Part shown: positions 3,343-29,437 of the stretch, piece by piece
Layout of the letters: each line of letters opens with the position of its first letter
Numbering within the stretch: the stretch's first letter is position 1
Assembly (NCBI GenBank): GCA_000388065.2
Contig: KB932204.1
Strand: one strand, 5' to 3'
Length of the DNA stretch: 64,000 bases
From: Fonticula alba ATCC 38817
Taxonomy: Eukaryota; Protista; Nucleariida
Translations under genes and position numbers: made by a program
Notes under the pieces: model-generated
Seen by the model: the letters and a program-made list of their open reading frames with translations, nothing else
What the model was told of the DNA's origin: nothing
The model's database searches: none

Positions 3343-6300
3343 GATGATGGCCCGGCACGCTGTCGCACACACATCCCGGTGGATGGCCAGGGGGGAAACC
3401 TGGGCCCGGGCGGCCGGGGACCATACACCGGCCAGAGACCAGCCCCGTCGGGCCGCCACCGCCGTCGCCAATGCCGGCGAGCCCCACGCACGCAGGGCTC
3501 GCACGGCCGTCCTTGAAACCAACATACGATGAGAGGGGTCGAGGGAGAAGGCGAGAAGAAGAGAAAGGCGCGTGCACACGCACAGAGAGAGAGGAAGGGG
3601 GAGGGGAGGGGGGAAAACGGAGGTTGCCATGTGCCCCAGGCCCCCCGCGCATGCGCGCCCCACGCCCACAAATAGATCCCCACACACAGCCCCTCCGCAA
3701 AGAGCAGCCCCCCGGAGGGAGCCCGGCCCCAGCGAGCANNNNNNNNNNCCCGCGCATGCGCGCCCCACGCCCACAAATAGATCCCCACACACAGCCCCTC
3801 CGCAAAGAGCAGCCCCCCGGAGGGAGCCCGGCCCCAGCGAGCACGAGCGCATACACACAAGGAGATCGCACGCCGCTGCACAGGACACCGCAAACACAAA
3901 CCCGAGGAGGGCCTCCCATCCAGCAACCCGTCCGTTGGCTGTCCGGCTCGCATTATCAAATGATATGAATTCGCATTTTCCTTTGAAGAAAGACATTATT
4001 GGCTAAGGCTCGCACATGATGTGCTAGAGCCACGTGCCCAGCACATGCCCATCCGCCTTGCCATCCGCCAGGACGGGAGGCATGGCGCCGCGCGCTCCCG
4101 CCAACCTGGCGCCCCCCGGCGCAGCCCTTCCCCATGTGCCCCCTCGTCACAGAGGGGCGGCCCTCCCTCAGCCTCCACCATGGCCGGCTGCCGGAGATGG
4201 CGAATGGCCCCCCCCCCTTTGCGCCAGGACAATCCGCATGCTCTGATGCATACAGCCTGTCTTCTTCGCCGCCGCTCCCTCGCTCGCCCCCAACTCCTGC
4301 ACTCGCCTCCTGCTGGCCCCACGGTCAGCGGCGCGCACCACGCACCTCATGGGCCCGGCAGTGCGGCGCAGCGCGCCGCCCCCCGCTCGTCTGGCCCCGC
4401 GCGGCCGACTGTCGGCCCCTCCGACAAGCGAAGGCGCAGCATCGGCCTTCGCCGCAGGACGGTCCACCCTCCGCCGGCACACGGCCGCCGGAAACATGGC
4501 TCCCCTTTTTCCCCCCTCTCCCGGCAGGGCAGCCTCTCCCGGGCGCCGAGAAGCGCCCCCTCTGTCTTTGGCAATCCCGGAAGGAGACCTGCTTGCCCCC
4601 ACACGGTGCGTGTGTGCCAAGTGTGCCCGGCACCCGATCATGGGGCTCCTTTGTTTGTCCGCCCTCCCGACGGTCGCCGCGCGCAGCATCGGCCATGGAC
4701 GCGATAGAAGTGCGTGTGCGCGCGCGCACACGGTACGCGTCTGGCGCCCGGATGCCCGCCGAATGGCTTGCCTCTCCAAGTCCCCCTCTCGCCGCCAGCC
4801 AGTCCACCACATCGCGTGGGGCCTTGTTGCTCGGGCCGGGCCGATGGTTAGGGCCAGCACCGAGCCGATGCCTCGCCGCCTGCTTGCCCAACTCATCCGG
4901 CGCTGGGAACTCGCGCGCATGCCGCGCACCATAGCCCCATCCTCCCAAAGCGGACCCCCTCGCCATCGACCCATGTGCGCGAGGGGGAAAGGCCCGCAGC
5001 TGCGCACCCATACCAGCGCGGGGGCGGGAGTCGGCCTGCGCGCATGCCACCACCGAGCGACATGCCGACCGGCGGCCAGGAGGGCAAAGGGGAGCGCCAC
5101 AGCCGGCAAGACGCAAGACACAGGGCATGAGATGCTTGGCGACGCACGCAGGACATCGGGGATGCGCCTCGGATCGCGGGCAAGATGCACCGCGCCATGT
5201 CGCTCCAGCAGCCGCCGCCGCCGCCGCCGCCTCGCGCGACGCACCTGCACATGGTGCCACCTCCTCCTCCGTCCGCCCGGCCGGGCGGACGCCCGAACGC
5301 ACACCGGCACACCCGATGGCACGGCCATGCACATGTGCAGACACAGATATATATATGTGCGCACGCACAAAGGCCCCTGGCCAGGCGGAGGCAGGGGCCC
5401 CGCCCGAACGGCGCCCTCACGAACAGGCCCCCCCCCCCCCCTCACTCCGACCCACCCTTCGCCACGATGGGGCCCGGCCCGCTGCCTCTTCCTCCCCGCC
5501 GGGCAGGCGCCGCCGCCCATCACTCCATCGCCTCATCGGCCCGCCAAGGCCCCTGGTCAGGCTCGACGCAGCCCCCCCGCCACAGGCAGTGCATGCCCCC
5601 TTCATGCCGGGGCCCCAAGGGCGCCCAGGGTCCACGGGGCCGCGCGACAACCGACGCGCAAGAACACACGGCCACGTAGAGACACGCGCGCCTCCGACGA
5701 CAGCCCCGTCGCCCGGGGGGCCTCTCCGCGCACATGCCCCTGCGCGTGGCGGTCGCTCCCAGGACACAGCCATGGCCGCGCGCCGCCGAGCGGCCCTGCC
5801 CGGTCGCGCGTCGACCACCCGCAGATGGCCGCCGTCGTCCGCCAACAACCGGCTGCTCGCCGCCTCACCGAGAGCACCACCATGCCGGGGCCGCGCGGCC
5901 GGCCCATTCCACGCGCCGACTGCACAACCCCACACCGGTCCCCATTCCCCCCTTGCTCATTGTCGGGTCTTCCCGCACGCGAGCAGGGATGCGTCCGTGT
6001 TGCCCGGTCGGCCCTCTCGGCATGAGGACGCGGCCAACAACCACCCGTAGGCCCACGCCGCCCCCCGCCCCAAGGGGAGGGGGCCACCAGGGCCGGGCAG
6101 GCTCTTGCGCTTGCCCCGGCCCGTGGTCGGCACCTTCTTTGTCCTGCCTCCTGGGCCCTGCCCCTTGTCCTCCCCGGCCCCCTGGCTCCGAGGCGCGCCG
6201 CTGGTCCTTCGATCTGCGTGCCCTCCCTCCGCCCTTCGCGGCTGCCCTCGCCCTCGACACCGAGGCATACCAAATGCGAGTGCATCTGCCCGAACTCTCG

Positions 6301-13390: not shown

Positions 13391-13457
13391 GAGCAGGAGC
13401 AAAATCCGGGAGCGAGCAGGAGCAAAATCCGGGAGCGAGCAGGAGCAAAATCCGGGA
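13391..13457 (+). repeat. 23-bp tandem repeat GAGCAGGAGCAAAATCCGGGAGC, about 3 copies
   Basis: Copies at 13391, 13414 and 13437 (partial). Confidence 0.9.
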
Positions 13458-14854
13458 AGTGGAGGGGGCCGGCCGGCCGGCCGCCGAGGAGAGAAGGGGC
13501 GAGGCAGGGGAGAGGGATAGAGGGGCGAGAGCGTCGGATCCCTGGCCACGGGGGCGCGTCAAGAAAGGCATCGGCCGCAGGCGGACTGTGGTTCTTTAGC
13601 GTCGAACGACGGCCGCCTCGCACTCGTCGGCGCATTCGGTCGCGGCGGACACCGCAGAGAACCCCCTCAGCAAATTGAGTCACTCTCCAGGGTGGGAAGC
13701 CACACGCGCTCTTGATGCACTTGGTTACAACGAACTCCATTCCTTCGAAGGGAGAACACACCGAGGAAGGCACGGCATGGGGCCCACCGGGCTCGGCCCA
13801 TGCGGGGGGCCCAAGCGGGGAAGGGAGATGCGACCATGCGCTGGGTCTTCGAATTGGGCCTCCAGCCCAGATCAGGATCACAAAACACACCTCGTGCTGG
13901 CCACCGGCTCGGCTCGATGAGTCCCCCTCGGCAGTCCTATGCCATCCAAGAGCGTGGCTGAAACACCAGTTGGGCCGTCTCCAGGGCTTCCTCCCGGACC
14001 CGGCTCGAACATGGCTCGACACTCATTCCTGTGTGAGTGTCGGCCAACCTATCGACGGCCGGGCAGCCCGCCTCAACCAGCTGGATGTGACATATGCCCG
14101 GGACCTACAAACAGGCGATGCATACACAGAGAGCTCATCGGGCAAGGACGCTTCACCGGGAAAGCATCTCTCAACGTTTCACTCCAGAGAGGGAGTGATG
14201 GATACATAAGACCTAGTGGGGCAGGCACTCCACACATGATGACTGGCAGGGGCCCAGTGTAGTTGTAGTCATAACGAAAAGACTGCCAACGATTGGTCCC
14301 CGGAAGTCCCGGCGCATTTGACCAACCACTAACCTAGTTTCCCGGTTGGTTAGTCAGATAATTCTTAAACTGACACCCCCATGTTGCGGCGTAGCATGGA
14401 CGAAGAGAGCTCACCAGACGACGGTCATTTTGTTTCCAGGATCCATTTCATTAAATGTTTATTACTCCAGGGCTTCTACGGGCGAATATATTCCCTGAGA
14501 CCAACGCACATGTGTCCATGCCATATCATTGGCAACACGTGGATGCCTGGAAACGAGGGCATCTCCGAAACCCGACCCGTATCGCCGATGGTCTTCGATC
14601 GTACTTATGAGTCGTGGGATCATCATAATAATCGTTGCTTTTTTATATTCATCATCATCATCATCATCGCATACAGGTGTTGTGCCTTGTGTGTTGAACG
14701 ACTAGCCTCAGAGTGCTTTGGGAGACGATGGATGCAAGTAGTTCATAAACGCACACATATCGAGTGGGTGTCGAGATGCAAGGGCCAAGTAAGGATCGTG
14801 GCGAATAGGGACGGATGAGGTACAGACCAAGGTCAGATGTCAGGGCTGCAGGGG

Positions 14855-14953
14855 TATAAAAGGAGGCACGATTGAGGACAGGTCAAAACATAAAAGGGGC
14901 ATCTTCCTCTCATTCCCCTCATTCCCCTCATTTCCCTCATTTCCCTCATTCCC
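14855..14953 (+). promoter_or_regulatory. Putative Pol II promoter: TATAAAAG (14855-14862), CATAAAAG (14889-14896) and five tandem 9-mers CTCATT(C/T)CC (14909-14953)
   Basis: Seen directly upstream of the PIN nuclease gene. Each 9-mer fits the YYANWYY initiator consensus. A candidate 5'-UTR intron lies at 15010-15142 (GTAACA...GACTAAC...TTACAG). Confidence 0.5.
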
Positions 14954-15158
14954 CCACTCCCTAAGTCAGAAATAATTCGTCTTCTTCAAATCCATCAAGG
15001 ATAGTCTAGGTAACATTTCTGAAGATAAACACACAATCCCATCCGCCCACAATATTCTTACTCCTGACTTGGAACTTGTCTTTGGCCTGGTTGCGATGGT
15101 CCATCTTTCGGAACACGACTAACGTACTGTCATATATTACAGCAAGGCCACCCCGAAG

Positions 15159-18100
15159 ATGGGAATTCCCTTTCTACACTCTCTCCTTGATGATTCGGAC
15201 AAAGCTAAAACGACCCTGAAAGAACACCTACGATTGACGGCCAACCCGAGCAATGGTGAGTCCCCAAAAAAAGAATCGAATGTTAAAGAATCTTCGGAAA
15301 GTTTAATGTGGCCACTTCCAGTGGACGTGAGCAATATTTCTTATTCAATCATGGAGCATAAATTCAAAAAGGGGAATGAGCTTATTAAATTAGGCAGATG
15401 TCCTCATCTGATTGAGAAGTTTATCTTGTCTTTCATCGATTTTCTTTCAAAAGATAATGTATGTAATCAGCATTCTCCACTTCGAATGTCCTATCGGTTA
15501 TGATATTTGCTAAACCACAGTCTTATTTCAAGTTTCATCCCATTTTCGTGACCGACGGCTTGCGTCCTAAGAGCAAAATGAATAGTGACCCTCGGATCGA
15601 CAAGAGCAATGACACATATTCGTTGTGTGAAGATGGGAAATATAAATCGCCAGAAAGGTACTCGCGTATCCCCAATATGTATCAACCCAACATGATTACA
15701 TTGATCAAGGCTTAATTACCAATTTGAACTGACTCTCCCAAATTAATTACAACTAAGCGGAAGCACGTCAAGGGCCATTGTAGGTGAACCTGCCTCGGAA
15801 GATCCCCCTCCGTCTTCTTCGAAGCCGATAAAACTAGGACAGGGTCCATCGGACGAAGATCTTAATCAATTGGCTTCCTTAAAAAATGGGATGCCTCATT
15901 TGATAAGAATTATTATTTGGCACCTCTCGACCAAAGAGCAACTGTTCCCAAAAAAGTTAACATTCGTCAATTCAGCAGTCGAAGCTGATGATTTATTGAC
16001 GGAGCTGAGTCTAGATTTCGGCATTCCTGTTTTAAGGTCCGTGAACTCGCGTTTTTCCATTGATGGAGGCCATTGTTTGAATCAATCAGCGTCTGACTCT
16101 CATGAATCATTAATTGGTTTATCAGCGGTGATACGGATTTCTTGATCCGCGGTGAAGGCTTCATACCTATGAGTTCCATTTTGCAAAAGGTCGTATTGGA
16201 TGAGAATGAGCAGTTTAATTTCAACGCCTCCTCGATATTGGACATGGATTGCTATTCAACGAAAAAGGTCTTTTCGCAAGGTGCGCTATGAAACCGAGAG
16301 AATGGCTTCGCTGTTTAGTCGAGATTCTCAACTAACATATTAAAAGAGTTGAGCCGGAAGACCCCATGGATTCCCTTGTTTCTTGGAAGCGACCATGGAC
16401 CGCCAGATCCTTTGGTCATTGAGTCGACAATTGGATTGATCTTAAAACAGGTGGTTGAGTCGGTTAAGAACAAACACACGACATCTACGTGTAAATCGAC
16501 TGATGATTCGATCGAAGAAACAATTCTACATGTGATCGATTTAACACGACAAAAAATTACGAACATTAAAACAGATACCAAAAAAAAGTTAAAGGAGAAA
16601 CAGTCGGAAGCAAGAAAAAGGGGATTTGGTGTGGCATTGACATACTTAGAAGGTAAACCTAATGGCGAAATCAAAACCGATACTCAAGGCAATAATGAGT
16701 CGGCCAAGACGCCATTGGGAGAGGCAATCAAACTTATAAGCAACAAGATTATCATGCTTTTGGTTGAAAGCCATATGGAATCATTTAAGAAAGAATTAGG
16801 CAGTCTAGTGAGAAATAAGTATTGTGGGGCGATAAAAGCGGCAGAGATAAATAATCAGCCCTGTAAATATGTCAAGGCAGCAATCGAGCCTTCAATCGAA
16901 GAAGGAGTCCTAGCTGGGATCAATTGGTTAAAGCATGAACTATGCTCTTCTATAAAACCCGAAGAAATTGCAGACGCGATCTATCGTGAGATCATGCACC
17001 AGACGGATGTCAGCAGAAAGAGTGGCTGTGAAGCAATGACAAGGGAGCTCGGAGTGGCAATCAGAGATACAGTCGATGAAATGGTTGATGATATTATTGG
17101 GTTAGGCCAGTTGGGAGATCACTTAAAAAATGCAAAAGAATGTTACGACGCCCCAGATGGAGACTATGTCAAAGCCAAACCAAAGGCGAGGTATGGTCGG
17201 AAGCATCCTGGATTCAACCTCGATTATCTCTCCATAATCCTTCATCGGCTCCCATATTTCTCAAGCAATTACGGTGGCTTGGAAAAAGACAAACTTTCCG
17301 CGGATTCTCGAAGTGAAAACATAATCATTGTGGATGATAACCATCGGCAAAATATCTCAAACCACCTGAGCGGTCTCCTGGGGCATAAAATTATGGACAG
17401 AATCCTGGCCGGGAGACGCTCGGATCCCCTAAAAATGAACAAAGAACAACAAACCAAGAAAATCCGTGAAGGGCATTGTAATGATTGCCTTCAGCTTCAG
17501 TTTTTAAGACCTGAACAATCCATCCCACGAGATATTAACCTGGAACTGACGTCGTCAATTTGTATTTACTATTCAGCTCTTAAATTATACATTCGTAGCT
17601 TGTTTGACAATAGTCGCTACTCGACTCTGGAAATTATGAAAAAGGTTCATAAGTTATGGCTGACCGAAATACAGATGTTGAAAGCACAATTGATCATAGC
17701 TTTAAAAACACAGAGCGGAAGTATTAATTTCCAAAGAAATGGCTCCATTTCGGAGATTGATTTTGATAGGCGCATAACCGCGATTGAACACTTTGTCCGG
17801 GAGGGCAATCCTTTAAGTTATGTATGCGACAATGTATCACGGAATGAGCATCGGCGGATTTTGTTTGCAGTCATCTATGTTTGCGATTTCATGATTGAGA
17901 CAGTTGCATTATCTGTGTGTGTGGTCTTGGGATTATATGGATACCAACAGTCTGCGAGAGTTGAAGCAGTAAAGTCAGGATTAAATGAAACTCTTACTAA
18001 TATTACCTATGCTTTAGCAAAGGTATCCTACGTCTTTCAACAACAATTTACGTTTAAGTATAACCGGAGTGTCCACAGTCAGATCTGGACTCTTCAATTT

Positions 18101-19957
18101 AAAATCTCTTCGGGCAACCTTCTCCAATGGATAGACGAAAAAGACTACCAGGCTATGTATTCCGAGGTTTCTGCGGTCTCCATGGATCAAAATAAAGCAC
18201 CATCAATCGTTATGAGCAATGTCTCAAATCGCAGTCTTGCGTCAAACGATAAATGTAAAACGTGTGTGTTTATTAGAAACAATATCCCAAGGGAGAAAAC
18301 TCATATGCTGTGGGCTCCTAATAATTCTGACAATGGAGATGGTCCGACCATCTGGGATCCTACTCGGCTATCACGCTTCCTTTCTTATTTGGTCTGGTCA
18401 ATCAACGAGTTTTTTCCCGTGACACATGTGGAAATGCACCAATTCCATGCGGACTCGGAGAAAAGGATTGTCTACAATATTTTCAATCGTAGTTGTATGT
18501 CGATTGGCGACTATGATTCGATGAAAAAGAATGAAATTTATTCCAAGACTATCGAAAATCGCAAGTTTTTTTCTGCGCTTGGCAATAATGATAAAGAACT
18601 AGGAGTTGCCTCATGTCTCGAGAGAAACTGGAAAGAACTGGACGAGATGTCATGGGAAAGAACAAATGCCAACTGTAAGGATATGAACTTTTCAACCCAA
18701 GACCGTGATATCTTAAACAACAGTTTACGTGATATGGAATCAGAGTGGTTTATGATGAGTGTTCCAAAGGATCGCCAAACTCATCCTGATTATCCGGCTA
18801 ATATGCTTTGTTATACTCTGATAAATTTCTTGCTTCAGAATCAAGGTCAAACGATCGATCGTATTCATCTGGCATTCATCATCATGCCATATCTCAACAA
18901 TATCAGTCTGCTCAAAATTAAAAACAGACTTGTGAAACTTAAATTGAGGCAAAAAGAAGATGGCCAACTTTCTATCCGTTTCTCTTCAAATCCTTATGCC
19001 CATGAGAAAATTATCACACACCCAGATGCCAAATCCGTTCTCAGCATTTACAATATGGTGATTCTTATTTGTTTAATGAGGGGGAATTCGACCGACAACA
19101 CATTGACTCTAAAGTCATTTCTCAAGGAGGTAAATCTCACCGGCCCAGTTCTAAATTCAGCTGTCGCGTTATTGGAAAATCCAGATTGGCTAAAGCTCTC
19201 TGACGGAGACTATCAGAGTGACTTGGATGTGGTTCTCACTTGGTGCCTACGGAATGTGGAAAGAGAATTCATTGATGGTAGGATCACAAGAATTGGCCGC
19301 CTCTCTCGGGGCGGATTCATTAACAACCATTTCCCGGACCTCATAAGCACTTACCAGAGTCTGAATCTCAACCAAGAACATAATGTGCTCAATGATGAAT
19401 CCAAGCCCGACTGCCCCTCTAATGTAACCATCATTTCTGATTTCGACCGTTTATATAAATCCATCTTGACATCCGAGTCTCCCTTATCAGATCAAGTTAA
19501 ATCCTCTTTTAACAAGATTACAACTAGAATGCTAAATTTTCCTACCATTGAGGAAAATCTTTCAATCTCTCGCCAGGCTCTTTCCCTTATGTCTACCAAC
19601 AAAGACACTATCAACATGACGGACTGTTCCAAGGAGCTCTTGCGACCTTTTTTATCATCATTAGCAGAATATGTTCTCGGGATCAAGGATATGGGGTCGA
19701 AAAACCATCAATTCTCATTTGATCAATATTACCTCGGTCTGCAGTATGCCCTCGATATACCCGTTGACCAAAGAGATCGGCGCGACAAAGAGCGGCTTAT
19801 CACTGGTCTGTCATTGGCGTCCGCCACGTTGTCTTCATGGATGGATATTCATTCAGCGCTTGTTGGTCGTTGGCGGGCTTTGAATCGGACTAACGCACAA
19901 CCTACTTCCTGGGTTGCTCGTCGTCTCATTCACTTTATGAGCAAGTGGTCCTTCTAG
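15159..19957 (+). CDS. Asteroid-like (XPG/FEN1-family PIN) nuclease with a very long C-terminal extension, about 1,488 aa; exons 15159-15458, 15521-15657, 15773-16036, 16126-16280, 16347-19957
   Basis: Introns: GTATGT..GCTAAAC..CACAG, GTACTC..ACTAAG..AAG, GTCCGT..TTTATCAG, GTGCGC..ACTAAC..AAG. All phases close (4,467 nt). The spliced product gives MGIPFL, LPVDVSN, PIFVTDGLRPKSK, EADDLLTELSLDFGIPVLSGDTDFLI (spans intron 3) and LFLGSD. The exon-3 acceptor could alternatively be 15758. Confidence 0.85.
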
Positions 19958-21149
19958 GTTTTCCATCCCCTTTTTATTTTCCAGCTTTTTCTCCCAATCC
20001 TATTCTTGCCCCTTCTTCATCTACTTTTCCCCGCTTTCCCCGTTTCTTCCCTCTGTCGCCGCACTTAGCAGGCCTTGTTCTTTCCCTCCTTTTCTTTTAT
20101 CTTTTTCGCTCATTCTCTCCCATTTTTCCTCCTTTTCTCCAATGCACCCACAACCATGTCAATTGCCAGCGTATTTCCTTTTTGCCTTGCACATTGCTGT
20201 CCCCTTCATGTACTTAGCGCATTGAGACGAGTGGATGAGGGCAATGTTTTGGATGGGCATTATGTCTTTCCTTACGCATGTCTTTTATTTGAGTCTATGG
20301 CCTATCTATCCGGTTGATTATTTCGCAATTGAGTGACAGCTGAGACGGCCCCTCTGTGCCAGTGTGCCTGATAGGGTGGTGATTATCCTTTGGGGAATAT
20401 CTCAACATGGGTTGTATTTGAATCTGTCACGCGGCACTGTCCCATTCCCTGCTCCTTGAAACATCGGCTGCCATAATGTGCATCGCATCTTGGTTTCCCC
20501 GTCGGCCGGGAATGGCCGCCCCTTCCCATCCATCTCACAGCTGCAGATTGCCCGGCCAGATAGTTGTTCCCCGCTGAGACGAGACACGTTCCCACCAGGC
20601 AATAAGGGCCCGCCCCCCCCCCTCCCCCCATAGCCCGTTAGCAGTGCCAAGTCCCTGTAGAGGACGTGTCCAACATCGATCTCTGCCCCGACAGGCCACA
20701 ATCCACCGAGTCGATACGCCATGTGAGCTCTTCGATCGTGGCACAGGTCCGTAGACTCGGCGTCGTCATGAACGTCACTGACAGACTCCTTTCAAGAACA
20801 TACCGGGGGTACCTTCCTTTGCTCGCTGCCCAGGAACGTTCCTAGCGTGCCATACAGTAAATGATGCATGATACCGTGCTTATTCTTTTTACAACCCAAC
20901 ATGGCACAATGTAATGGCAGCGACATGACCACGCACCACCAGGGGGTACCGAAATTTGTCACTGCGTACTCGGCGGGGAGACGTTTATTGCAAGGCTCCC
21001 GATCTAAATGTGTACTCGATCAGTGAATTAGTTGGGGCTTGCAGCACGGAATGCCTATGGGTGTGTGGGCTGTCCGGATATAGGAATTGCACGACCTCAT
21101 ACCGCGAGACGCAGGACTGCACCACCTTGGAGTCCCTGCCCGCACCCCG

Positions 21150-22200
21150 AACATGACCAAGTTCGTGTTGTCACCATGGATGGTCGTCACTGTTGTGGGA
21201 TCGCAGCATCTAAACATGCCGGACGATCATCGCCCTTGATGATACAAGTATGGTCCCTGAAAGAAGTCCCCAAGGCATTGGGCTCATCGGGAAGGACTCT
21301 GATCGATACCATAACCGTCCTAGCCCGATGAGAAGCGCTATTCACGAAAGAGGCAAGAGACTACCGGCATCTTGTGGAACAAGCAACATTACCGACAAGT
21401 CGAATGCTGTGCAAACGTTCCTTCCATAACCATAGCTGGCATGCATCTTGACGCGCAGGCTCCCGATTCTAGATCGTCCTGCCGCTATCTGCCCACGCGA
21501 GCCACCACGAAGATGTTGCGTCGCCCGGGGAATCTCTACCTTCTCCCGGACTTAGGAGATTACGAAGATTCACTCAGGGTCGCCATCGCGGATCAGCTCC
21601 ATGACTCTCGCTAAACGTGCTTGGTACTCGTACAATCATGCACCCGGCGGCGCTGTCCAGATCCGTCACCTTGGAGGCGACAGTCGCAAAGCAAAAACGG
21701 CAGCTCGCTGCACATCGTTCATGGGCTTAGTGCGCCATGCGCCGGGCTGAGGAGTAGCCTGCAAACGCGAGGACCGCCCGGTCGACAGCGGCGTCTACCA
21801 CTCACGTCCTTGGTCTTGTATCATGCTTCCAATGGCGAGCAACACCTTGGCCATCCATCCGCACTGGGCATACCCTTGAAAGACAATGACCAATAATACC
21901 CTCCTCGAGCAGAAGATACTCCTCCCTGAGAACGATTCTCCAGTGATATATACTCTTCCGATCCCGGGAGACAGACACAAGGGAACCACACACCCGCTCC
22001 CGATGTATCTGGGGGCCTCAGTCATGTCCCACCATCGCGGGGGGCACACTCTTCCTATACAAGATCTGATTTGCCTCGGGATGCATCCGCTACACTTGAA
22101 AGCGACTGACCACGCTCTGCTGTTGACTGTGCCTCCGACTCGGAGTAGAGCATTTGGATTGAGGGACATCCAGGGGGGGGAGTCGCCAACCTTTCGGGAC
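21150..22200 (+). pseudogene. Decayed paralog of the 40.1-47.6 kb orphan gene
   Basis: Short ORFs in changing frames with stops at 21329, 21612 and 21894. Collinear motifs: TMDGRH~HVDGRQ, CRYLPT~LRLLPS, HLGHPSALGIP~LLIHPSTIDALGSP, LPMYLGASV~LPPLGAGV, DLICLGMH~DHILLGVH. Alignment by eye only. Confidence 0.5.
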
Positions 22201-23084: not shown

Positions 23085-24541
23085 CACCCGCGCCTGCCCG
23101 TCCTGCAGCAACGAACCCGGTGCCAGTGCGCTGGATCGCCGCGTTCACAAATGGCCCCCTCGGCGGGACAGAGCAGCCGCATGGGCCCATCGCACACCCC
23201 GCCTCCCAGGCACGTCGGGAGAAGGGGTCCCGGCTTCGGCGAAGCCCCTGCGCCCCGTCGGGCGACACGTGGCCCGCGTGGCAGGCAGATGGCCTTCGAG
23301 GGGGCCCACGCCCCCTGGCGACTCGTTCGCCAAGGATGCTCGCCGGGGCGCAGGGGCTTCGCCGAAGCTGGGACCCCTTCTCCCGACTTGCCCGGGCGAT
23401 CGACCGCCGGGGCCACCTCGGGGAATCCTCGCAAACACTTGCCCTATCCCCGCCCACCCGCTTCACATCCGGCCCAATATACTCAAACCAGCCCACACGG
23501 ATGTCAAGCCCGAAAGCCCCCTCGGCCCACGCGCTGATGTCCTCAGCCGGCACCACGGACCACCGACAGGCGACCCGTGTGCCGCCATGGGCTTAGTCGC
23601 TCCCGGGGGGGAACACCAGCATCAGAGGCCCCCACTTGCGCACACACACAGGGGGACGCCCCACGTGGCGCCCGATGCCGAGACCACCCCAGCTGGGCTT
23701 TTGTTATTGTTTGACGCACTCGGCGATGGCGAACATTCGCCCGAGTAAGAAACATTGGCTGCTCGGGCCCAGATGGCCCATGGTCGCTTCCCATGGCGCA
23801 ACTAAAATCACCCTCGCCATTCGCCCACCTTCTCTGACCCCGTTCAACCAACATGCGCCGAGTCGACTCCCATCGCGAAATAATCCGATTAAATAATCCT
23901 GATATTCATCGGCCGGCCCGGGGTGGCACTCCGCCGAGCGTTGGCAATCGGGGAATCATGGCACGGTCGCGGCAGTGTGGCTTTGCAGATGCCTCCCCGG
24001 TCGGCGGCCTTTCGTCGCTTCCCAGTGAGCCCTCTCCTCCTCGCCGCCGGGATGTCCCCCGTCTCATGGCACGGCATCCCCGAGAAATGGGTCTTCCTGC
24101 CGGTCGATGCGCCGATGGCGACGCAAGCCCCCTGGCTTCGAGAGGGCACTGCTGAGCCTGCCCGCGCGGTTTGTCCCATTTCCCCCCGGCCACCCACATC
24201 GTCCCGCATGGACCACCCCTGGTGGACACTCACCAGCCCCGGCCCGGTGGGTCCGTGCCCTGCCGTGACCTACCTCCCGAGCTCTCCGCGCCCGGGGCAG
24301 CCCGACTTGCCACAGCACCCAGGCAGAGACGGGATCCCGCTGACGACCAGGCGTGGCACGCCTCCCACGGTGTCCGCGGTGCCACCTCCTCAGCATCAGT
24401 CGGAGCTCGGTCCGGCTCTTCCTCGGCCTCGGCCGGCGGGAATCCCAGAGCCAGGGCCATGACCTCGACCATCCAGTGCCGTGCGCGCTGGCCCATGCCC
24501 CGGGGCTGGGATCCGAGCTCCGCGAAGGGGAGAGGGCCAAA
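23085..24541 (+). repeat. Copy 1 of a 1.45-kb GC-rich direct repeat (cut by gap 24542-24551); contains a 44-bp inverted repeat at 23214-23257 / 23344-23387
   Basis: Near-identical sequence recurs from 29438 and from 29975 to 31408. Confidence 0.9.
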
Positions 24542-24687
24542 NNNNNNNNNNTCGTCGAGGGCGTGACCAGATATGGCGGGGAGGCGACAGCAGGGGAAAA
24601 CAGAGCAGGGCGAGGCGAGGCAGGTGCGGAGAAGGTGAGCTGAGCGAAGTTCCGACGCAGCGTCGGGGGTGACATTATGGTTACAAG

Positions 24688-24854
24688 ATACAATCTCAGC
24701 GCCTGTGGGACTTTTTTAAGTCCATGTCTTCGAGCTGAGACCCAAGAGCGTTTAAGGATCCCAGGCAGGGCTTGTCAAAAATACGATCTCAGCGCCTCTG
24801 GGACTTATTCAAGCTAATGTCCTGGACCCGAGACCCAAGAGTGTTGACGGGATC
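24688..24854 (+). repeat. Two imperfect copies of a ~73-bp unit (24688-24760 and 24781-24854; period 93)
   Basis: ATACAATCTCAGCGCCTGTGGGACTT...GAGACCCAAGAGCGTT versus ATACGATCTCAGCGCCTCTGGGACTT...GAGACCCAAGAGTGTT. Confidence 0.85.
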
Positions 24855-25583
24855 GGATTCCTGATTTCATAGAATAAAAGTTTGACATCAGAGCCATTTG
24901 TTTGCAGAATAAAATTAAGGGCATAACAGCACCTCTCGTTAGTTATGAAAGATGAAAACTCTGCTACAAACCGCTAACAGGTGACGCACATCGTGTGGCT
25001 TCGTATCAGCCACATTCGTCTTGGCAGCTCTAATCTCTTTCTGGGTAGCTGTAGCCATAACCATAACCATAATGTAAGCATATAATTCGCATCCAGAAAC
25101 AAAGAATCTGTGGCAATTCTATGAGAAGCAAGATTTAATTTGCGAACGTACAAGCTCGAGGAACGAGCAGCAATACCGTATGATCCTTATAATATATGTG
25201 TCAATAATGTCAATACCACAAAAAAAGGAGAATCGGCTCAAAGGCCGACAAACATGCATAGGGTCACGGCAAAAGCAAATGTGGCCCGAGGAAGAAAAAA
25301 GGCCTCCTCATCAAGCTAGACAAAAAGAAAGGACAACAGGGCTGAGTCATAGATGCGCACAGGCCAGGCTGCCTTCGCGCAGGCGATGGTCCTGAAGCAG
25401 GAATATTCTTTCGGCTCAGAGTAGGCACACGCCAAAGCGATGTCGTCGTTGCCATGAGTGGGCGAGACCAAGACAAAAAGGACTGAGAACCGCATTCATT
25501 AATAAACTCACACATTATGGCCGCAAAAATGCTGCACATGCTTTCAGGTAGTCATAACCATACCATCCATAGCCTCCTCCACA

Positions 25584-26943
25584 TCAAGCAAAAAGTGCGT
25601 CTTTCAAAAAAGAGTGGTCCTGTCAGATCATTGACAATCAAAGGAAAACACGCGAACCGCAGCATGAAAAATCCATAGTTGCTGGCAATGATCACAGTTC
25701 ATCCCATCACCACGGTTTAGGACGCACATAACCATCACTTTGCTCAAGCGATTGATCTCTTGGGCCAGCAGCAGGGTGAGTAGAGGTTCCCGGATTGCCA
25801 TCGGAGCCGCGATGGTGGGAATAATGGAAGATGAGATGGTGCCTCTGCTTGCTATAACACAATGAATCACACTTGTGCTCGAGCACATCAGAGAGCTGGA
25901 CAATCTTTGAATTATAGAATTTAACGTGCTCTGCGCCAGGATTGACACATTGAGCTGACAAAAAGGGACGCATCGGTTAGCCATAATGGAATAGAACTAC
26001 TGTGAGAGGGATGGGAAAAAATAGCTGCAAAGACTCTCGTACTCTTGCTAAAGACGCGGTTTCTCAAAAGGCCCGGGTTATTTTTTTCGAATTTCTCGTC
26101 TTCAGCAACCACTATGAAGCAAAGAAGGAAAAGTCGGTTGTAGGTAAATAATGACGTCTGATCAGTACGCTTGCTCCCCAAATTTCGGACTATTTGGGAT
26201 ACTTCGATGCCTTTTACCATAAGAATTGCCCCCGGGATGACGTACCGAGCTTCCAGCACCACTCCACAGGAGTAAGTCCCTAGTCAATTAGAAAAGAGTA
26301 AATCGAAGTTAGTGATTATTGACCACTTTAATGGACTTGCTTGCACCCGGTGAGCATGAACAACCAGAGCAGTGCTTCATAAAATGAACAGCCATAAGAG
26401 ATGTGATCAAGAATGTGCCCACTCGGGGCGCTGATAAACGCACTGGCTTCGCCAAAATTGCTTCCTCAATAGTTTTGCATGGGTACTCCACAGACGCGTC
26501 ATTATGACTCTCTCCAAAGAGAGGCGAAAAGTGCGAATATGCTGAGACAAACACACAATTAGGTTAGTACCACCCACCGACCTGGGAATTCAAACAGACT
26601 ATCGAGAGAGCCTGTCTCGGATATGGAGAACAAATAGAAAAGTAGACTCATACGCACCATTAAGATCCTGCGAGGTATCGGACTTGCCATCACGCTTGGA
26701 GGCCGCTTTCTTTTTCGCAGGATCGACATTGTTCTCGGTTTTCTTGGAAGATGGCTTCTTCTTGTTACTATTATTCTTAACGTAGAAATAACGTGCTTTG
26801 TTTTCTAAACAGCCATGAAGGTCAGTTGTGGTTATGGAGCGCATGGCAAGAAGGCCAATGTTTTTCAATTCCATGCGCTGATATGGGGCATCGGCTGTGT
26901 TTAGGCGCTTCATCATAATACTGAGCGTACCATCGGTGGTCAT
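25584..26943 (-). CDS. Spliced orphan protein, about 307 aa; exons 26943-26658, 26541-26347, 26279-26169, 26111-26043, 25954-25728, 25619-25584
   Basis: Donors GTGCGT, GTGCAA (or GCAAGT), GTACTG, GTACGA, GTGCGT. Branch points TACTAAC, CACTAAC and GCTAAC precede three acceptors. Phases close (924 nt). Lys-rich patch KKKPSSKK...KKKAASKR and a HCSGCSC motif. Last exon uncertain. Confidence 0.65.
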
Positions 26944-27094
26944 GGTGTCTTGGTTTGATCGAGAAGGTCGTGGTCAAGGGCAAGAAAGAGGAAAGGGACA
27001 AAATGAGCTGTTTTGAGCAACAGGTAATTTTTATCACTACACTGTCATTCAGGCAATGCCTCGGGTACGTCCTACCTGTCTCACACCGAGCCGT

Positions 27095-27102
27095 CTTTTA
27101 TA
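27095..27102 (-). promoter_or_regulatory. TATAAAAG box about 150 nt upstream of the island-2 gene
   Basis: Plus strand CTTTTATA at 27095-27102, followed on the minus strand by a CT-rich leader before ATG 26943. Confidence 0.45.
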
Positions 27103-29437
27103 GAAACCCACACAGGAGACGACGTACCCCTCTCGTATTTGCACAATCCCGGAACTGCTGTCCTTCAGGATTGGTTGAATTGGCCAGGATAGTTAGAGCG
27201 CAAATCATCTCTCAGCGCACAATACCCCCCAGTCCCAACCATAACTATAACGAGGAGCGTCTTTATTTCCTGGAGCCTGTGCGCTCTGAGCTAGCTGCTT
27301 TTCGACACCCCAAGCGCTCTGGATACGTTCGGTCTTGAGGATTACAAATATTCTCAGGACTGATGGTTCTTAGAAAAAGGGAGGTACTTTCCCCGTTGCG
27401 GTCGATAAGATTCCTGAGCCTTAAACTGAGTGCCATTTGCCGCACAGAGTTTGTTCATTTCCCCGGCGAAAGGGCATCTGTAGAGCTCTCTTCTCAAGGG
27501 CTATTTTCCTCGCGCTTCGCCGTTCCTGCGGCTAGATTGGCAGCTTGCTGCGCTACTTTCCCCTAATTAGCCATAATAGCAAACTTTATATCTCCCGATA
27601 TGTGATGCAGTCGTCGGTCCAGTTTGACCCTCTCAAAGGGAGTAGCACGAGTATAGGACATCGATGTGCCGTAATGACCTCTGAACGCCCATCCCGAGAT
27701 ACTTCATCACGATGGCAAGAATAGCTCACGTCTCCACCACTATGTCAGTATTAGACTCAGGAAGGAATAATGCTCGAACAAAACTTTTTCACTTCTCATC
27801 AATACATTAGACCTAAGCACGTACCCGAACAAAGGTTTACTCATACACACACATACACACTGATGGACATTTAGGTGCGCACGCGTACTTATGCCGTCTG
27901 CTAAGAGGTCGCTGAGGCGTCAACATCCAAGTCAGAGTATCAAGCGCAAGAAAAACCTGACATGAACAAGAGCCTGGCATGTTGTCTAAAACTCCGAGAG
28001 AACAACAAACTACAAGAGCGGAAACTCTATCTCTTCTGGGCTTTTTCACGGCATCACCGGTATGGCCCACTCGGAAGGGCGCAGCTTGCATAAGCTGATG
28101 TCCCATACGCACCTCAGAGGGGCTTTAATAATGAAAAATGAAAACTTATAACACTGCTTTCGTGCATGCTTTTTACCTTCTCTCTACCCCTCCCACCCTC
28201 CCTCCCCCGCCGCGTGGGCGAGCACCTGCGTATACCAGATGTCGCTAGACGTATAGACGATGTGTTGTGCTGCCGGTCCGAGAGCCCCTTTAGAACCCCG
28301 GCCATTTGAGCTAGGTCGTTCTTGTTCAGGGGTTGTGGTCGGGTAGGTGGTGGGGAAGAAGGGGGCTGGACTCCAGTCCGCACCACTCCTTACCAACGCA
28401 CGACCACCCCGTCGAATCCATAACGAATGCCAGCGCCACAACACCTTCCTATGGATTCGTAGACATATGCATGATGGACCTTCAGACAAGTTACAGGCCA
28501 CCCTCAGGCGCCTCACTAACACACCATGCACATTTGCAGATGTTTTCCTCTAACATCGTCACGCATGCGCCACTGTTATGAGAAATGATACAACAGCCTC
28601 CTCCTTCTTTCCAAGTAGTCGGCGGTTCCCAAAACTTCATCAATGGAGGCTTTACTCTCCGCTGGAAGGCGATGTGACTATGTCAACCACTAGCTAAAAC
28701 ACGACCACGCGTAGGCTGACAAGCTGTACGCTGCACGAAACAGAATTTCACCACCTCGCCCAAGCGCGGCTTACCTCCTCTCCCAGCGCCTCCTCTTTTG
28801 AAGCGAGAACGCTGGAAAAGTGCGGCCGTCATGGGGCGGTCGGGCCTCTTCAAGTGACTGACTCTTCATTACCCCGACCCTCACAAATGGCCATCACTTC
28901 ACGCGCTCAAAGCTCGTTTGTCCGCTTGACCCCACATTTCGTACTCCCTCGAGTTTGGAGGCCATCACTTGGCTCGAGGCTGAGGCAATCCGGAAAGATT
29001 AAAGCCCACCACAACATGCCGTCAGAACTCAAAGCACAGCCAAAGACTGGCTTCCCAGAAGCCCCTCCCCCAACCCAATAGTATAACAACTCGACATGTC
29101 GGGCGAATGCCCCTTAGGGTCCTCCTTAAAATACCCCGTAAGCCCTGCACGATTCTTTCCCACACTTTTATCCATATTTCCAGAAAGCCCATGTTAGGCT
29201 CATCCACTACCCACCTCGAGTCCGGGCACGTTATGACACTCCCATGGATTCCTCGATTGAGATTTCCCATTGCTCACACTTTGTCACCCTAAATGTTGGA
29301 ACAATGTGCGGGCCAGGACCCTCTCTGTCAAGCCATCATCACCCTGTCGCTCCAACCACAAAGTGGCAGAGCTACCAAGATTTCTGCAATCCTCTCTTTC
29401 ACAATCTAGTGTCACGCTTTGCCGACTCACTCCGAGT

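What the first reader, a model, noticed from the sequence alone, without database searches (positions are those of the whole stretch)
15159..19957. Hidden ~1,488-aa Asteroid/XPG-family nuclease with an intact active site and ~1,150 aa of unknown C-terminus
Seen: the ORF track shows only an anonymous 1,202-aa ORF and three small ORFs. Four introns join them in frame and rebuild all acidic catalytic positions of the FEN1/XPG PIN fold: D at 15324 (VDVSN), D at 15554 (TDG), E and D at 15981-15989 (EAD), D-x-D at 16130-16138 (formed across intron 3) and D at 16391 (GSD). Established: MGI-x-x-L starts and the EAD-x13-VLS-x-D-x-DF spacing are typical of the Asteroid/ASTE1 branch; related FEN1-like PIN domains are also used by viruses (herpesvirus host-shutoff RNase, poxvirus G5). 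Inference: animal ASTE1 is about half this length, so the helical, CxxC-containing extension (HCNDC, KCKTC) may be a new architecture. Its low-GC setting suggests a mobile, selfish or defence-related nuclease rather than the housekeeping copy.
Basis: partly seen in the sequence, partly recalled or inferred. Interest (0 to 1): 0.8.

Follow-up and report, generated by a model that had tools for sequence, protein, structure and literature searches.

The report
Low-GC Asteroid-like nuclease gene, Fonticula
This is a real, spliced and transcribed gene of the slime mould Fonticula alba for a 1,489-residue FEN1/XPG-type nuclease; it is already in the public annotation and is one of nine copies of a family seen only in Fonticula, and its one oddity is being AT-rich in a very GC-rich genome.

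Summary
The window is Fonticula alba contig C4, and the gene is the public model H696_02547 (1,489 aa; UniRef calls it 'Asteroid domain-containing protein'). So it is not hidden.

- **Transcripts:** assembled contigs from four runs (two samples, one study) carry all four proposed GT..AG junctions, plus a fifth intron in the 5' UTR.
- **Profiles:** Pfam finds nothing in this protein. Three paralogs hit XPG_I_2, all below the cut-off.

The interpretation needs correcting in three places.

- **Not a lone gene:** the genome has eight more family loci, seven in tandem on contig C5 and one on C11. The three measured have 64-71% GC coding sequence. The paralogs share the nuclease domain, three intron positions with their phases, and the last ~550 residues of the 'unknown' C-terminus.
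- **No outside relatives:** a full HMMER search of 1.84 billion proteins found none.
- **No sign of mobility:** the locus is single copy, with no terminal repeats, no transposon domains in the flanks and no RIP signature.

The 42% GC island remains unexplained. In a 200-kb genome sample no 1-kb bin fell below 58% GC.

The parts
14918..15009 (+). 5' UTR exon. The transcript contigs begin at 14918-14927. It overlaps a 9-nt tandem repeat at 14904-14954.
15010..15142 (+). 5' UTR intron, 133 nt, GT..AG, with an ACTAAC branch-like box
15159..15458 (+). Coding exon 1 (aa 1-100): MGIPFL start and the first catalytic Asp, D56 (15324-15326)
15459..15532 (+). Intron 1, 74 nt, phase 0. Same alignment column and phase as in the GC-rich paralogs.
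15533..15657 (+). Coding exon 2: FVTDG with D108 (15554), and the family-invariant K115 and R121. These align with the conserved Lys and Arg that follow the VFDG motif in archaeal FEN1.
15658..15757 (+). Intron 2, 100 nt, in the variable arch insert. Not shared with the paralogs.
15758..16036 (+). Coding exon 3: the E217-A-D219 motif (15981-15989)
16037..16125 (+). Intron 3, 89 nt, phase 2. It splits a Ser codon AG|C, as in the paralogs examined.
16126..16280 (+). Coding exon 4: D237-T-D239 (16130-16138)
16281..16346 (+). Intron 4, 66 nt, phase 1. Equivalent position and phase in the paralogs.
16347..16522 (+). Start of exon 5 and end of the nuclease domain: LGSDHGPPD with D302 (16391) and D307. 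It aligns with the GTDY motif of archaeal FEN1.
16523..18316 (+). Residues ~346-943: middle region with no significant match to the paralogs and no Pfam hit. It holds HCNDC (17474-17488) and KCKTC (18251-18265). HCNDC aligns with a C-x-C pair in the paralogs.
18317..19957 (+). Residues 944-1489: the family's C-terminal domain (TIWDPTRLSRFLSYL, IDRIHLA, tail SSWMDIHSALVGRWRAL). Stop codon at 19955-19957.
19958..20162 (+). 3' UTR, as far as the transcript contigs reach (20061-20162)
14100..22200 (.). Low-GC island (core 14.4-20.5 kb at 0.38-0.47; shoulder to ~22.2 kb at 0.5-0.6). It is contiguous with GC-rich flanks and has no assembly gap.

Best explanation
The locus is an ordinary nuclear, spliceosomally processed and transcribed gene of Fonticula alba (H696_02547).

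Residues ~48-330 form a FEN1/XPG-type PIN nuclease domain. It keeps the full metal-binding acidic set (D56, D108, E217, D219, D237, D239, D302). It also keeps the Lys/Arg pair (K115, R121) that aligns with the conserved Lys and Arg after the VFDG motif of archaeal FEN1. The nearest subfamily is Asteroid/XPG_I_2.

The most likely mechanism, by inference, is two-metal-ion, structure-specific cleavage of nucleic-acid ends, flaps or overhangs. The family-specific C-terminal domain (residues ~944-1477) would serve as a substrate- or partner-binding platform.

The gene is the most divergent, compositionally aberrant member of a nine-locus family seen only in Fonticula (seven loci in tandem on C5, one on C11). 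It shares ancestry with the GC-rich copies, including three introns. It is not a transposon or virus cargo gene. Why it and its introns, UTRs and flanks sit at ~42% GC is unresolved. My leaning is long separate evolution as a dispersed paralog in a pocket that escaped the genome's GC drive.
For: Gene and expression: exact mapping of P0001 to the window. Intronless contigs in 4 runs carry all 5 junctions.

Subfamily: the top Atlas clusters by shape and by language-model features are both 'protein asteroid'. UniRef names the protein 'Asteroid domain-containing'. Paralogs hit XPG_I_2 at E 4.4e-4 and XPG_N at 0.026.

Motif register: the family profile finds only archaeal FEN1 in the PDB. It aligns FVxDG..K..R and LGxDxGPP to FEN1's VFDG..K..R and IGTDY.

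Family: the only 7 relatives among 1.84e9 proteins are Fonticula proteins, and a ninth locus was found in the genome. Catalytic residues are invariant across the family.

C-terminal homology: 37.3 bits, E 6.7e-11, against 5.5 bits for the best of 1000 shuffles.

Shared introns, by position and phase.

Not mobile: single copy, no terminal repeats, no TE domains in the flanks.
Against: Pfam gives no hit for this protein itself, and the paralog hits are below the gathering score.

Sequence matches to solved FEN1 are not significant alone (E ~1).

The model has mean pLDDT 56, and half of the residues are below 50.

No ASTE1, FAM120 or Mkt1 sequences could be brought in, so subfamily placement rests on weak profile hits and automatic cluster names.

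Nuclease activity and substrate are untested.

The extreme composition (none of the 1-kb bins sampled elsewhere falls below 0.58 GC) and a second low-GC island 4 kb away fit an imported segment at least as naturally as an in-situ pocket.
Confidence: 0.72

Rival explanations
1. The gene, with its ~8-15 kb low-GC segment, is a recent import from an AT-richer donor that carries the same gene family. The donor would be an unsampled relative of Fonticula, or a virus that had captured the host gene. The copy would then be a xenolog rather than an old in-situ paralog. Its function would still be a FEN-like nuclease.
For: GC is 0.42 in exons, introns and UTRs alike, and the non-coding parts are no closer to the host's GC. 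No sampled 1-kb bin elsewhere in the genome is below 0.58 GC. A second low-GC island lies 4 kb downstream. P0001 sits alone on a branch of 4.41 against a median of 0.93, outside all GC-rich copies. Giant viruses encode proteins named Asteroid-domain, and these appear among the structural neighbours.
Against: No relative outside Fonticula was found among 1.84e9 proteins, nor in the viral or metagenome contig scans. Three introns are shared in position and phase with the host paralogs, and the splice signals are host-like, which a viral route explains poorly. There are no insertion scars or terminal repeats. The tree placement of a long, compositionally deviant branch is unreliable.
Confidence: 0.2
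2. The PIN-like domain is not used as a nuclease. The protein would act as an RNA-binding or scaffold factor in post-transcriptional control, like Mkt1 or FAM120A.
For: The architecture, a PIN-like domain plus a long C-terminal half, is that of the Mkt1/ASTE1/FAM120 group, some of whose members act as RNA-associated scaffolds (PMC12345631). The weak language-model leads for the C-terminus are to MKT1_N/MKT1_C, FAM120A and XPG_I_2 clusters, at 0.77-0.85, below the tool's trust level.
Against: All seven acidic residues, plus K115 and R121, are kept in this copy. They are invariant or nearly so across the aligned family members; only one paralog has Gln for E217. That argues for retained catalysis. 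No MKT1 Pfam hit appears in any member.
Confidence: 0.12
3. This is the reader's view: a mobile, selfish or element-borne nuclease, the cargo of a transposon or integrated virus.
For: The low-GC island lies in a GC-rich genome. Repeat-flanked low-GC DNA lies next door, at 23.1-30.8 kb.
Against: The island is single copy at the DNA and protein level. No direct or inverted terminal repeats surround 14-22 kb. No RT, integrase, transposase or other Pfam domain is found in the flanking ORFs. The mRNA is normally spliced, with five host-type introns, three of them shared with the chromosomal paralogs. There is no RIP or CpG-decay signature.
Confidence: 0.05

Closest known systems
Asteroid / ASTE1 (Pfam XPG_I_2, PF12813; FEN-like group of the PIN superfamily, PMC5499597)
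   Same: It starts MGI..L, has a FEN-like PIN fold with 6-7 acidic residues, and has a non-catalytic C-terminal half. The top Atlas clusters by features and by shape are 'protein asteroid'. UniRef names it an Asteroid domain protein. Human ASTE1 is reported to be an endonuclease that trims 3' ssDNA overhangs with shieldin (PMC12599495, citing Zhao et al. 2021).
   Different: This protein gives no PF12813 hit, and the paralogs reach only 16-20 bits against a 24.2-bit cut-off. No ASTE1-type sequence appears among the HMMER hits. The C-terminal domain is shared only with Fonticula paralogs. The family has nine loci, not one.
FEN1 / XPG(Rad2) / EXO1 / GEN1 (Pfam XPG_N + XPG_I)
   Different: It gives no XPG_N or XPG_I profile hit. 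Fonticula has its own three canonical XPG_N/XPG_I genes elsewhere (C2, C3, C4:810 kb). The arch region is replaced by a long, poorly modelled insert (residues 112-184). No PCNA-box-type short C-terminus is evident; instead there are ~1,150 further residues.
Mkt1 / FAM120A-C
   Same: They have a PIN-like N-terminal domain plus a long C-terminal half, and are proposed to form one group with ASTE1 inside the Rad2/XPG family (PMC12345631). FAM120 proteins are of similar length to the paralogs, going by cluster sizes in the Atlas.
   Different: Only weak language-model leads link them (0.77-0.85). There is no MKT1_N/MKT1_C Pfam hit. The FAM120A model is absent from the library used.
Viral FEN-like nucleases (herpesvirus vhs, poxvirus G5R, giant-virus 'Asteroid domain' proteins)
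   Same: They share the general fold. They appear among the structural neighbours at the same weak level as cellular enzymes: ascovirus vhs-like E 3.7e-4, a Megaviridae Asteroid-domain protein E 2e-3, an Atlas vhs cluster TM 0.42.
   Different: There is no sequence-level relation. The Fonticula gene has spliceosomal introns shared with chromosomal paralogs.

Membership tests
FEN-like (structure-specific 5' nuclease) group of the PIN domain-like superfamily | PIN/FEN alpha-beta fold | tested here: met
FEN-like (structure-specific 5' nuclease) group of the PIN domain-like superfamily | Conserved acidic metal-binding residues (6-7) in the canonical order and spacing | tested here: met
   D56, D108, E217, D219, D237, D239 and D302 are present. 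They are invariant in the family alignments, except E217, which is Gln in one paralog, and D56, which is missing only from a truncated model. The register with FEN1 motifs is shown. Convergence of these residues in 3D was not inspected.
FEN-like (structure-specific 5' nuclease) group of the PIN domain-like superfamily | Helical arch between strand 2 and helix 3 bearing a conserved Lys/Arg | tested here: inconclusive
   K115 and R121 are family-invariant and align with the Lys and Arg that follow VFDG in archaeal FEN1. The arch segment 112-184 is modelled below pLDDT 50.
Asteroid / XPG_I_2 (PF12813) | Match to the Pfam model at or above its gathering score (24.2 bits) | tested here: not met
   P0001 gives no hit at E<=10. 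The paralogs reach 20.3 bits (E 4.4e-4) and 16.1 bits, and 3 of 8 members hit weakly. A six-frame search of the genome with PF12813 finds nothing (the control genomes were silent, so it is uninformative).
Asteroid / XPG_I_2 (PF12813) | Match to Asteroid_N (PF27698), or closest grouping with ASTE1 in a tree | not testable with these tools
   PF27698 and PF27242 are absent from the Pfam copy used. Support is indirect only: Atlas 'protein asteroid' clusters rank first by features (0.94, 200/256) and by shape (TM 0.43/0.51), and UniRef gives the Asteroid name.
Asteroid / XPG_I_2 (PF12813) | Endonuclease activity on 3' overhangs or other structured substrates | not testable with these tools
   Needs biochemistry. 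The activity is reported for human ASTE1 (PMC12599495, citing Zhao et al. 2021).
Mkt1 / ASTE1 / FAM120 architectural group | PIN-like N-terminal domain followed by a long C-terminal half | tested here: met
   The nuclease domain spans ~48-330 and is followed by ~1,150 residues. A C-terminal domain is conserved in the paralogs. The group is defined in PMC12345631.
Mkt1 / ASTE1 / FAM120 architectural group | Homology or shared fold of the C-terminal half | tested here: inconclusive
   Language-model leads of only 0.77-0.85 point to MKT1, FAM120A and XPG_I_2 clusters. The Atlas's own model of paralog P0003 has no structural neighbour above TM 0.25.
Transposon or virus cargo gene | Element boundaries (TIR/LTR, target duplication), multiple copies, or element genes alongside | tested here: not met
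   No repeats surround 14-22 kb. The locus is single copy. No Pfam domain is found in the flanking ORFs.

The most novel reading that the evidence does not exclude
The 42% GC segment holding this gene, and perhaps the neighbouring low-GC island up to 29.4 kb, is a recent eukaryote-to-eukaryote (or virus-mediated) import from an unsampled AT-rich relative that carries the same nuclease family. Fonticula would then have acquired a xenologous, intron-bearing, expressed copy of a rapidly expanding and possibly defence-related Asteroid-like nuclease.
Probability: 0.2. Interest if true: 0.6.

Novelty: new member of a known kind. Interest (0 to 1): 0.33.

Why it matters
The gene itself is ordinary: a FEN/XPG-superfamily nuclease of the Asteroid type, already present in the public annotation. 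Two points go beyond that.

First, Fonticula, a deep branch beside fungi, has expanded this little-understood nuclease type into nine fast-diverging loci with their own C-terminal domain. Seven lie in one tandem array, and the inserts vary between copies (acidic repeats, Cys-rich arch inserts). Such a pattern is often seen in conflict or surveillance genes. Asteroid-type nucleases have been linked to DNA-end trimming in humans and to antiviral or dsRNA responses in insects (PMC12599495, PMC10298989, PMC7598268).

Second, one expressed member sits in a gene-sized 42% GC island in a ~67% GC genome, yet shares introns with its GC-rich paralogs. That makes it a clean test case for how such compositional islands arise: escape from biased gene conversion, or import from a relative.

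Tried and rejected
- **Pfam:** scans of the separate exon ORFs, the full protein and residues 1-400 gave no nuclease family.
- **PDB by sequence:** phmmer of residues 1-400 returned only designed proteins at E~0.03, which is chance.
- **Word-index protein searches:** the 1,202-aa ORF found only itself. Residues 1-340 and the N-terminal family alignment found nothing. Their length window (about 190-600 aa) shut out full-length relatives, so these blanks say little.
- **Single-sequence AF2:** useless for residues 1-345 (pLDDT 33).
- **PF12813 in the genome:** the six-frame search was silent, and so were the controls. PF27698 and PF27242 are not in the library.
- **Viral and metagenome contig scans:** patterns matched but no confirmed relative was found; sensitivity was limited.
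- **The look-up of encoding contigs:** the protein is not on record there.
- **RIP-like or methylation-driven decay:** rejected as the cause of low GC. TpA/ApT is 0.56, (CpA+TpG)/(ApC+GpT) is 1.44 and CpG o/e is 0.87, all similar to the flanks apart from base content.
- **Assembly gap at the island edges:** rejected. There are no N runs between 3748 and 24542.
- **Island 2 as a decayed copy of the nuclease gene:** rejected. tblastn found no match there.
- **Rfam and tRNA scans of 12-31 kb:** nothing found.
- **One DNA self-search:** it was too long to be scored and was repeated on a shorter stretch.
Full report
**Identity of the locus.** The 1,202-aa ORF at 16349-19954 matches one public protein at 100% identity: P0001, NCBI 'hypothetical protein H696_02547 [Fonticula alba]', 1,489 aa. 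UniRef names it 'Asteroid domain-containing protein'. The window is contig C4:1-64000 of that genome. Exact mapping of P0001 onto the window, plus reading the sequence, gives these coding exons: 15159-15458, 15533-15657, 15758-16036, 16126-16280 and 16347-19957. All four introns are GT..AG. The gene is hidden only from a plain ORF list, not from the public annotation.

**Transcript evidence.** Four runs from 2012 (two samples, one study; recorded kind uncertain) each contain a single contig of 4.6-4.8 kb. These contigs lie on 14918-20162 with zero or one mismatch. Each skips exactly the four coding introns (74, 100, 89 and 66 nt). Three of the four also skip a fifth GT..AG intron of 133 nt in the 5' UTR (15010-15142); the fourth contig begins downstream of it. 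An intronless form of a gene whose genomic copy is single must come from RNA. So all four proposed junctions are confirmed and the gene is expressed. Contig depth cannot rank expression.

**Active-site residues.**
- D56 at 15324
- D108 at 15554
- E217 and D219 at 15981-15989
- D237 and D239 at 16130-16138
- D302 at 16391

Both Asp of the D-x-D motif lie in exon 4. It is the VL|SGDTDF motif that spans intron 3.

**Is it a FEN/XPG-type nuclease?** Sequence profiles alone do not show it.
- Pfam finds nothing in the pieces, in the whole protein or in residues 1-400, even at E<=10.
- phmmer against PDB sequences finds only chance hits.

The case rests on three other lines.

(a) *Relatives.* A full HMMER search of residues 1-1200 against 1.84 billion representatives found seven relatives (E 2.6e-13 to 1.4e-5). 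All are Fonticula alba proteins. Three of the eight family members give sub-threshold XPG_I_2 hits; the best is 20.3 bits, E 4.4e-4, against a cut-off of 24.2. One gives a weak XPG_N hit. No other family appears.

(b) *Structure.* A single-sequence AF2 model was useless (pLDDT 33). A model built on the eight-sequence family alignment has mean pLDDT 56, but 74-88 over the core (residues 50-110 and 190-275).
- Foldseek ranks FEN1, Rad2, GEN1 and XPG first, with probability 0.96-0.99 but E only 5e-3.

(c) *Motif register.* A family profile of the region from FVxDG to GPPD finds just four PDB sequences at E<=10. All four are archaeal FEN1 (E 1.3-1.6, not significant alone). The profile aligns the family's 'YPIFVaDGlkPkeKevtakeR' to FEN1's 'PIWVFDGEPPKLKEKTRKVR', and 'WlPLilGsDfGPP' to 'ILIGTDYNP'. 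So D108, K115, R121 and D302 fall on the FEN1 motif Asp, on the Lys and Arg after it, and on the downstream motif Asp.

Across the family alignments these residues are invariant: D108, G109, K115, R121, A218, D219, D237, D239, D302 and D307. E217 is Gln in one paralog only. D56 is missing only from one truncated gene model. I conclude that the N-terminal ~330 residues are a FEN-like PIN nuclease domain with a complete catalytic set. Catalysis itself is inferred, not shown.

**Subfamily.** Asteroid is the best-supported label, but it was not demonstrated.
- The ESM Atlas nearest cluster is 'protein asteroid' both by language-model features (0.94, 200 of 256 features) and by shape (TM 0.43/0.51). 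Asteroid_N, FAM120A and XPG_I_2 clusters follow.
- UniRef uses the Asteroid name.
- Against this, the defining Pfam model is not reached.
- The newer Asteroid_N and FAM120A models are not in the library at hand.
- I could bring in no ASTE1, FAM120 or Mkt1 sequences for a direct profile comparison or a tree. The word-index searches were blank, partly because their length window excluded full-length relatives.

Fonticula has three canonical XPG_N/XPG_I genes elsewhere. This gene is not one of them.

**A nine-locus family, not a lone gene.** A six-frame search of the genome with P0001 pointed to contig C5 at about 757-775 kb and to C11. Fetching C5:742-785 kb showed tandem genes on the minus strand. 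These are H696_03357, 03358, 03359, 03361, 03362 and 03363, plus a further copy at 777,751-782,505 that is interrupted by an assembly gap. With the C11 gene and the window gene, that makes nine loci.

Wherever the N-terminus is present, the loci begin MG[IV]..L and carry these motifs:
- LP[VI]D[LV]
- FV.DG..P..K.....R
- [EQ]AD[DE]
- .D.DF
- W[LI]PL..G.D.GPPD

The DNA of the C5 and C11 regions fetched is 58-77% GC per kb. For the three paralogs measured, CDS GC is 0.64-0.71, GC3 0.77-0.90 and intron GC 0.58-0.80. So the host does have GC-rich relatives of the window gene.

**The 'unknown' C-terminus.** MAFFT of the full-length proteins shows conserved islands far beyond the nuclease domain. In P0001 these are 'TIWDPTRLSRFLSYL' (954-968), 'IDRIHLA' (1123-1129) and the tail 'SSWMDIHSALVGRWRAL' (1449-1465).

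An HMM built from the seven paralogs' C-terminal parts scores P0001 residues 311-1489 at 37.3 bits (E 6.7e-11). The best of 1,000 shuffles scores 5.5 bits. The matched segments are 944-969 and 1201-1477. So the last ~550 residues are the family's own C-terminal domain.

The extra length of this copy (1,489 aa against 823-1,031 for most paralogs) lies mainly in residues ~345-940. That stretch has no significant match to the paralogs or to Pfam. Two cysteines do not make a zinc site, so I draw no conclusion from them.

No fold could be assigned to the C-terminal half:
- Language-model leads are weak (0.77-0.85) and point to MKT1, FAM120A and XPG_I_2 clusters.
- The Atlas's own model of paralog P0003 has no neighbour above TM 0.25.

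[quoted passage not shown] The general architecture is therefore not new.

**Shared gene structure.** Mapping the annotated paralogs to their DNA places three of their introns at the same alignment columns as introns 1, 3 and 4 of the window gene: column 119, column 314, and columns 398-409 across an alignment gap. The phases are the same too: 0, 2 and 1. Intron 3 splits a Ser codon as AG|C in the window gene and in the paralogs examined. The 5' splice sites and branch-like boxes are of the same general type. The window gene thus descends from the same intron-bearing ancestor as the GC-rich copies. It is not a retrocopy or a prokaryotic import, and a viral route would be hard to reconcile with this.

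**The compositional anomaly.**
- The coding sequence is 41.6% GC (GC3 44%). The introns are 36-43% and the UTRs 44%.
- FYMINK residues make up 31% of the protein, against 15-16% in the paralogs. GARP residues make up 18%, against 33-39%.
- The island core runs from ~14.4 to 20.5 kb, with a shoulder to ~22.2 kb. It is contiguous with the 62-75% GC flanks without any N gap.
- In a 200-kb sample (twenty 10-kb pieces from six contigs) no 1-kb bin is below 0.58 GC. Such islands are therefore rare.
- The only other one seen is 4 kb downstream in the same window, at 24.5-29.4 kb.
- RIP-type and CpG-decay signatures are absent.
- The island is single copy.
- It has no flanking direct or inverted repeats, and no Pfam domain in its flanking ORFs.
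- In a maximum-likelihood tree P0001 sits alone on a branch of 4.41 substitutions per site against a median of 0.93. Its composition is deviant, so its placement is not reliable.

The cause of the low GC is open. I lean towards an old dispersed paralog in a pocket that escaped the genome's GC drive. Import of the segment from an AT-rich relative carrying the same family is a live alternative, at about 0.2.

**Function.** Shown here: the gene is transcribed and spliced, it encodes a FEN-like fold, its catalytic residues are conserved, and it belongs to a tandemly expanded, fast-diverging family seen only in Fonticula.

Inferred: metal-dependent, structure-specific cleavage, with the C-terminal domain acting as a binding platform.

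The biological role is a guess. Human ASTE1 is reported to trim 3' overhangs with shieldin (PMC12599495, citing Zhao et al. 2021). A silkworm Asteroid limits baculovirus replication and is induced by dsRNA (PMC10298989). Lepidopteran REase, a relative of Asteroid, is studied as a dsRNA-degrading nuclease (PMC7598268). The tandem expansion and variable inserts fit a surveillance role better than a single housekeeping repair role, but nothing here tests that.

**Verdict.**
- Observation: confirmed.
- Interpretation: partly supported. The nuclease call is right. 'Hidden', 'new architecture' and 'mobile/selfish' are not supported.
- Novelty: a new member of a known kind, with a so far unexplained compositional island.

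**Earlier notes of this scan.** All three notes that came up overlap this same stretch. Two bore on this report:
- s1-066051 called the gene an orphan bracketed by DIRS-type relics. Within the genome it is not an orphan, and I found no element domains or repeats around it.
- s1-066174 noted two low-GC islands with host-type introns. That agrees with what I saw for island 1.

Noticed in passing
window 23107-30807: A second low-GC island (24.5-29.4 kb, GC 0.45-0.54) is flanked by direct repeats of about 830 bp (23107-23939 and 29975-30807, 99-100% identical), with an extra partial copy at 29462-29956. The repeats contain 59-nt inverted repeats. The interior has no long ORF, no Pfam hit and no other copy in the genome. 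N gaps at 24542-24551 and 29965-29974 make the assembly uncertain here. It could be a local duplication or the remains of a terminal-repeat element.
   Followed up: partly
window 24553-24686: A stretch of about 130 bp, directly after an assembly gap, recurs at 15 or more sites on many contigs at 78-95% identity. It has no Rfam family and no tRNA. It may be a short dispersed repeat or an undescribed small RNA gene. It is followed by two 73-nt repeat units at 24685-24757 and 24778-24850.
   Followed up: partly
G000:C5:743,247-782,505 (loci L012, L013, L015, L016, L018): A tandem array of seven Asteroid-like nuclease genes lies on the minus strand (H696_03357-03359, 03361-03363, and an extra copy at 777,751-782,505 broken by a 590-N gap). 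Some members carry a Cys-rich insert in the arch region. H696_03359 (2,063 aa) has a ~300-aa acidic insert after the MGIFML start, long acidic and lysine-rich low-complexity tracts further on, and Gln in place of the E217-equivalent.
   Followed up: partly
G000:C5:757,786-758,655 (H696_03359) and G000:C11 (protein P0008): Two public gene models look imperfect. H696_03359 carries about 26 extra residues before SNDKDF, where all paralogs splice directly from PVL to S.D.DF. The C11 'variant' protein starts at the DG of the FVxDG motif and so lacks the first exon with the MG..L start and the first catalytic Asp.
   Followed up: no
window 14904-14954 and 13391-13459: A 9-nt tandem repeat (TTCCCCTCA-like) sits at the start of the transcript contigs, in the 5' UTR. 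Three 23-nt tandem units lie 1.5 kb upstream, in the GC-rich flank.
   Followed up: no
Fold search viral library: Giant-virus proteins named 'Asteroid domain-containing protein' (a Megaviridae environmental sample) and 'asteroid-like' (Terrestrivirus) are among the structural neighbours. So Asteroid-type nucleases occur in low-GC giant viruses. No sequence-level link to the Fonticula gene was found.
   Followed up: no
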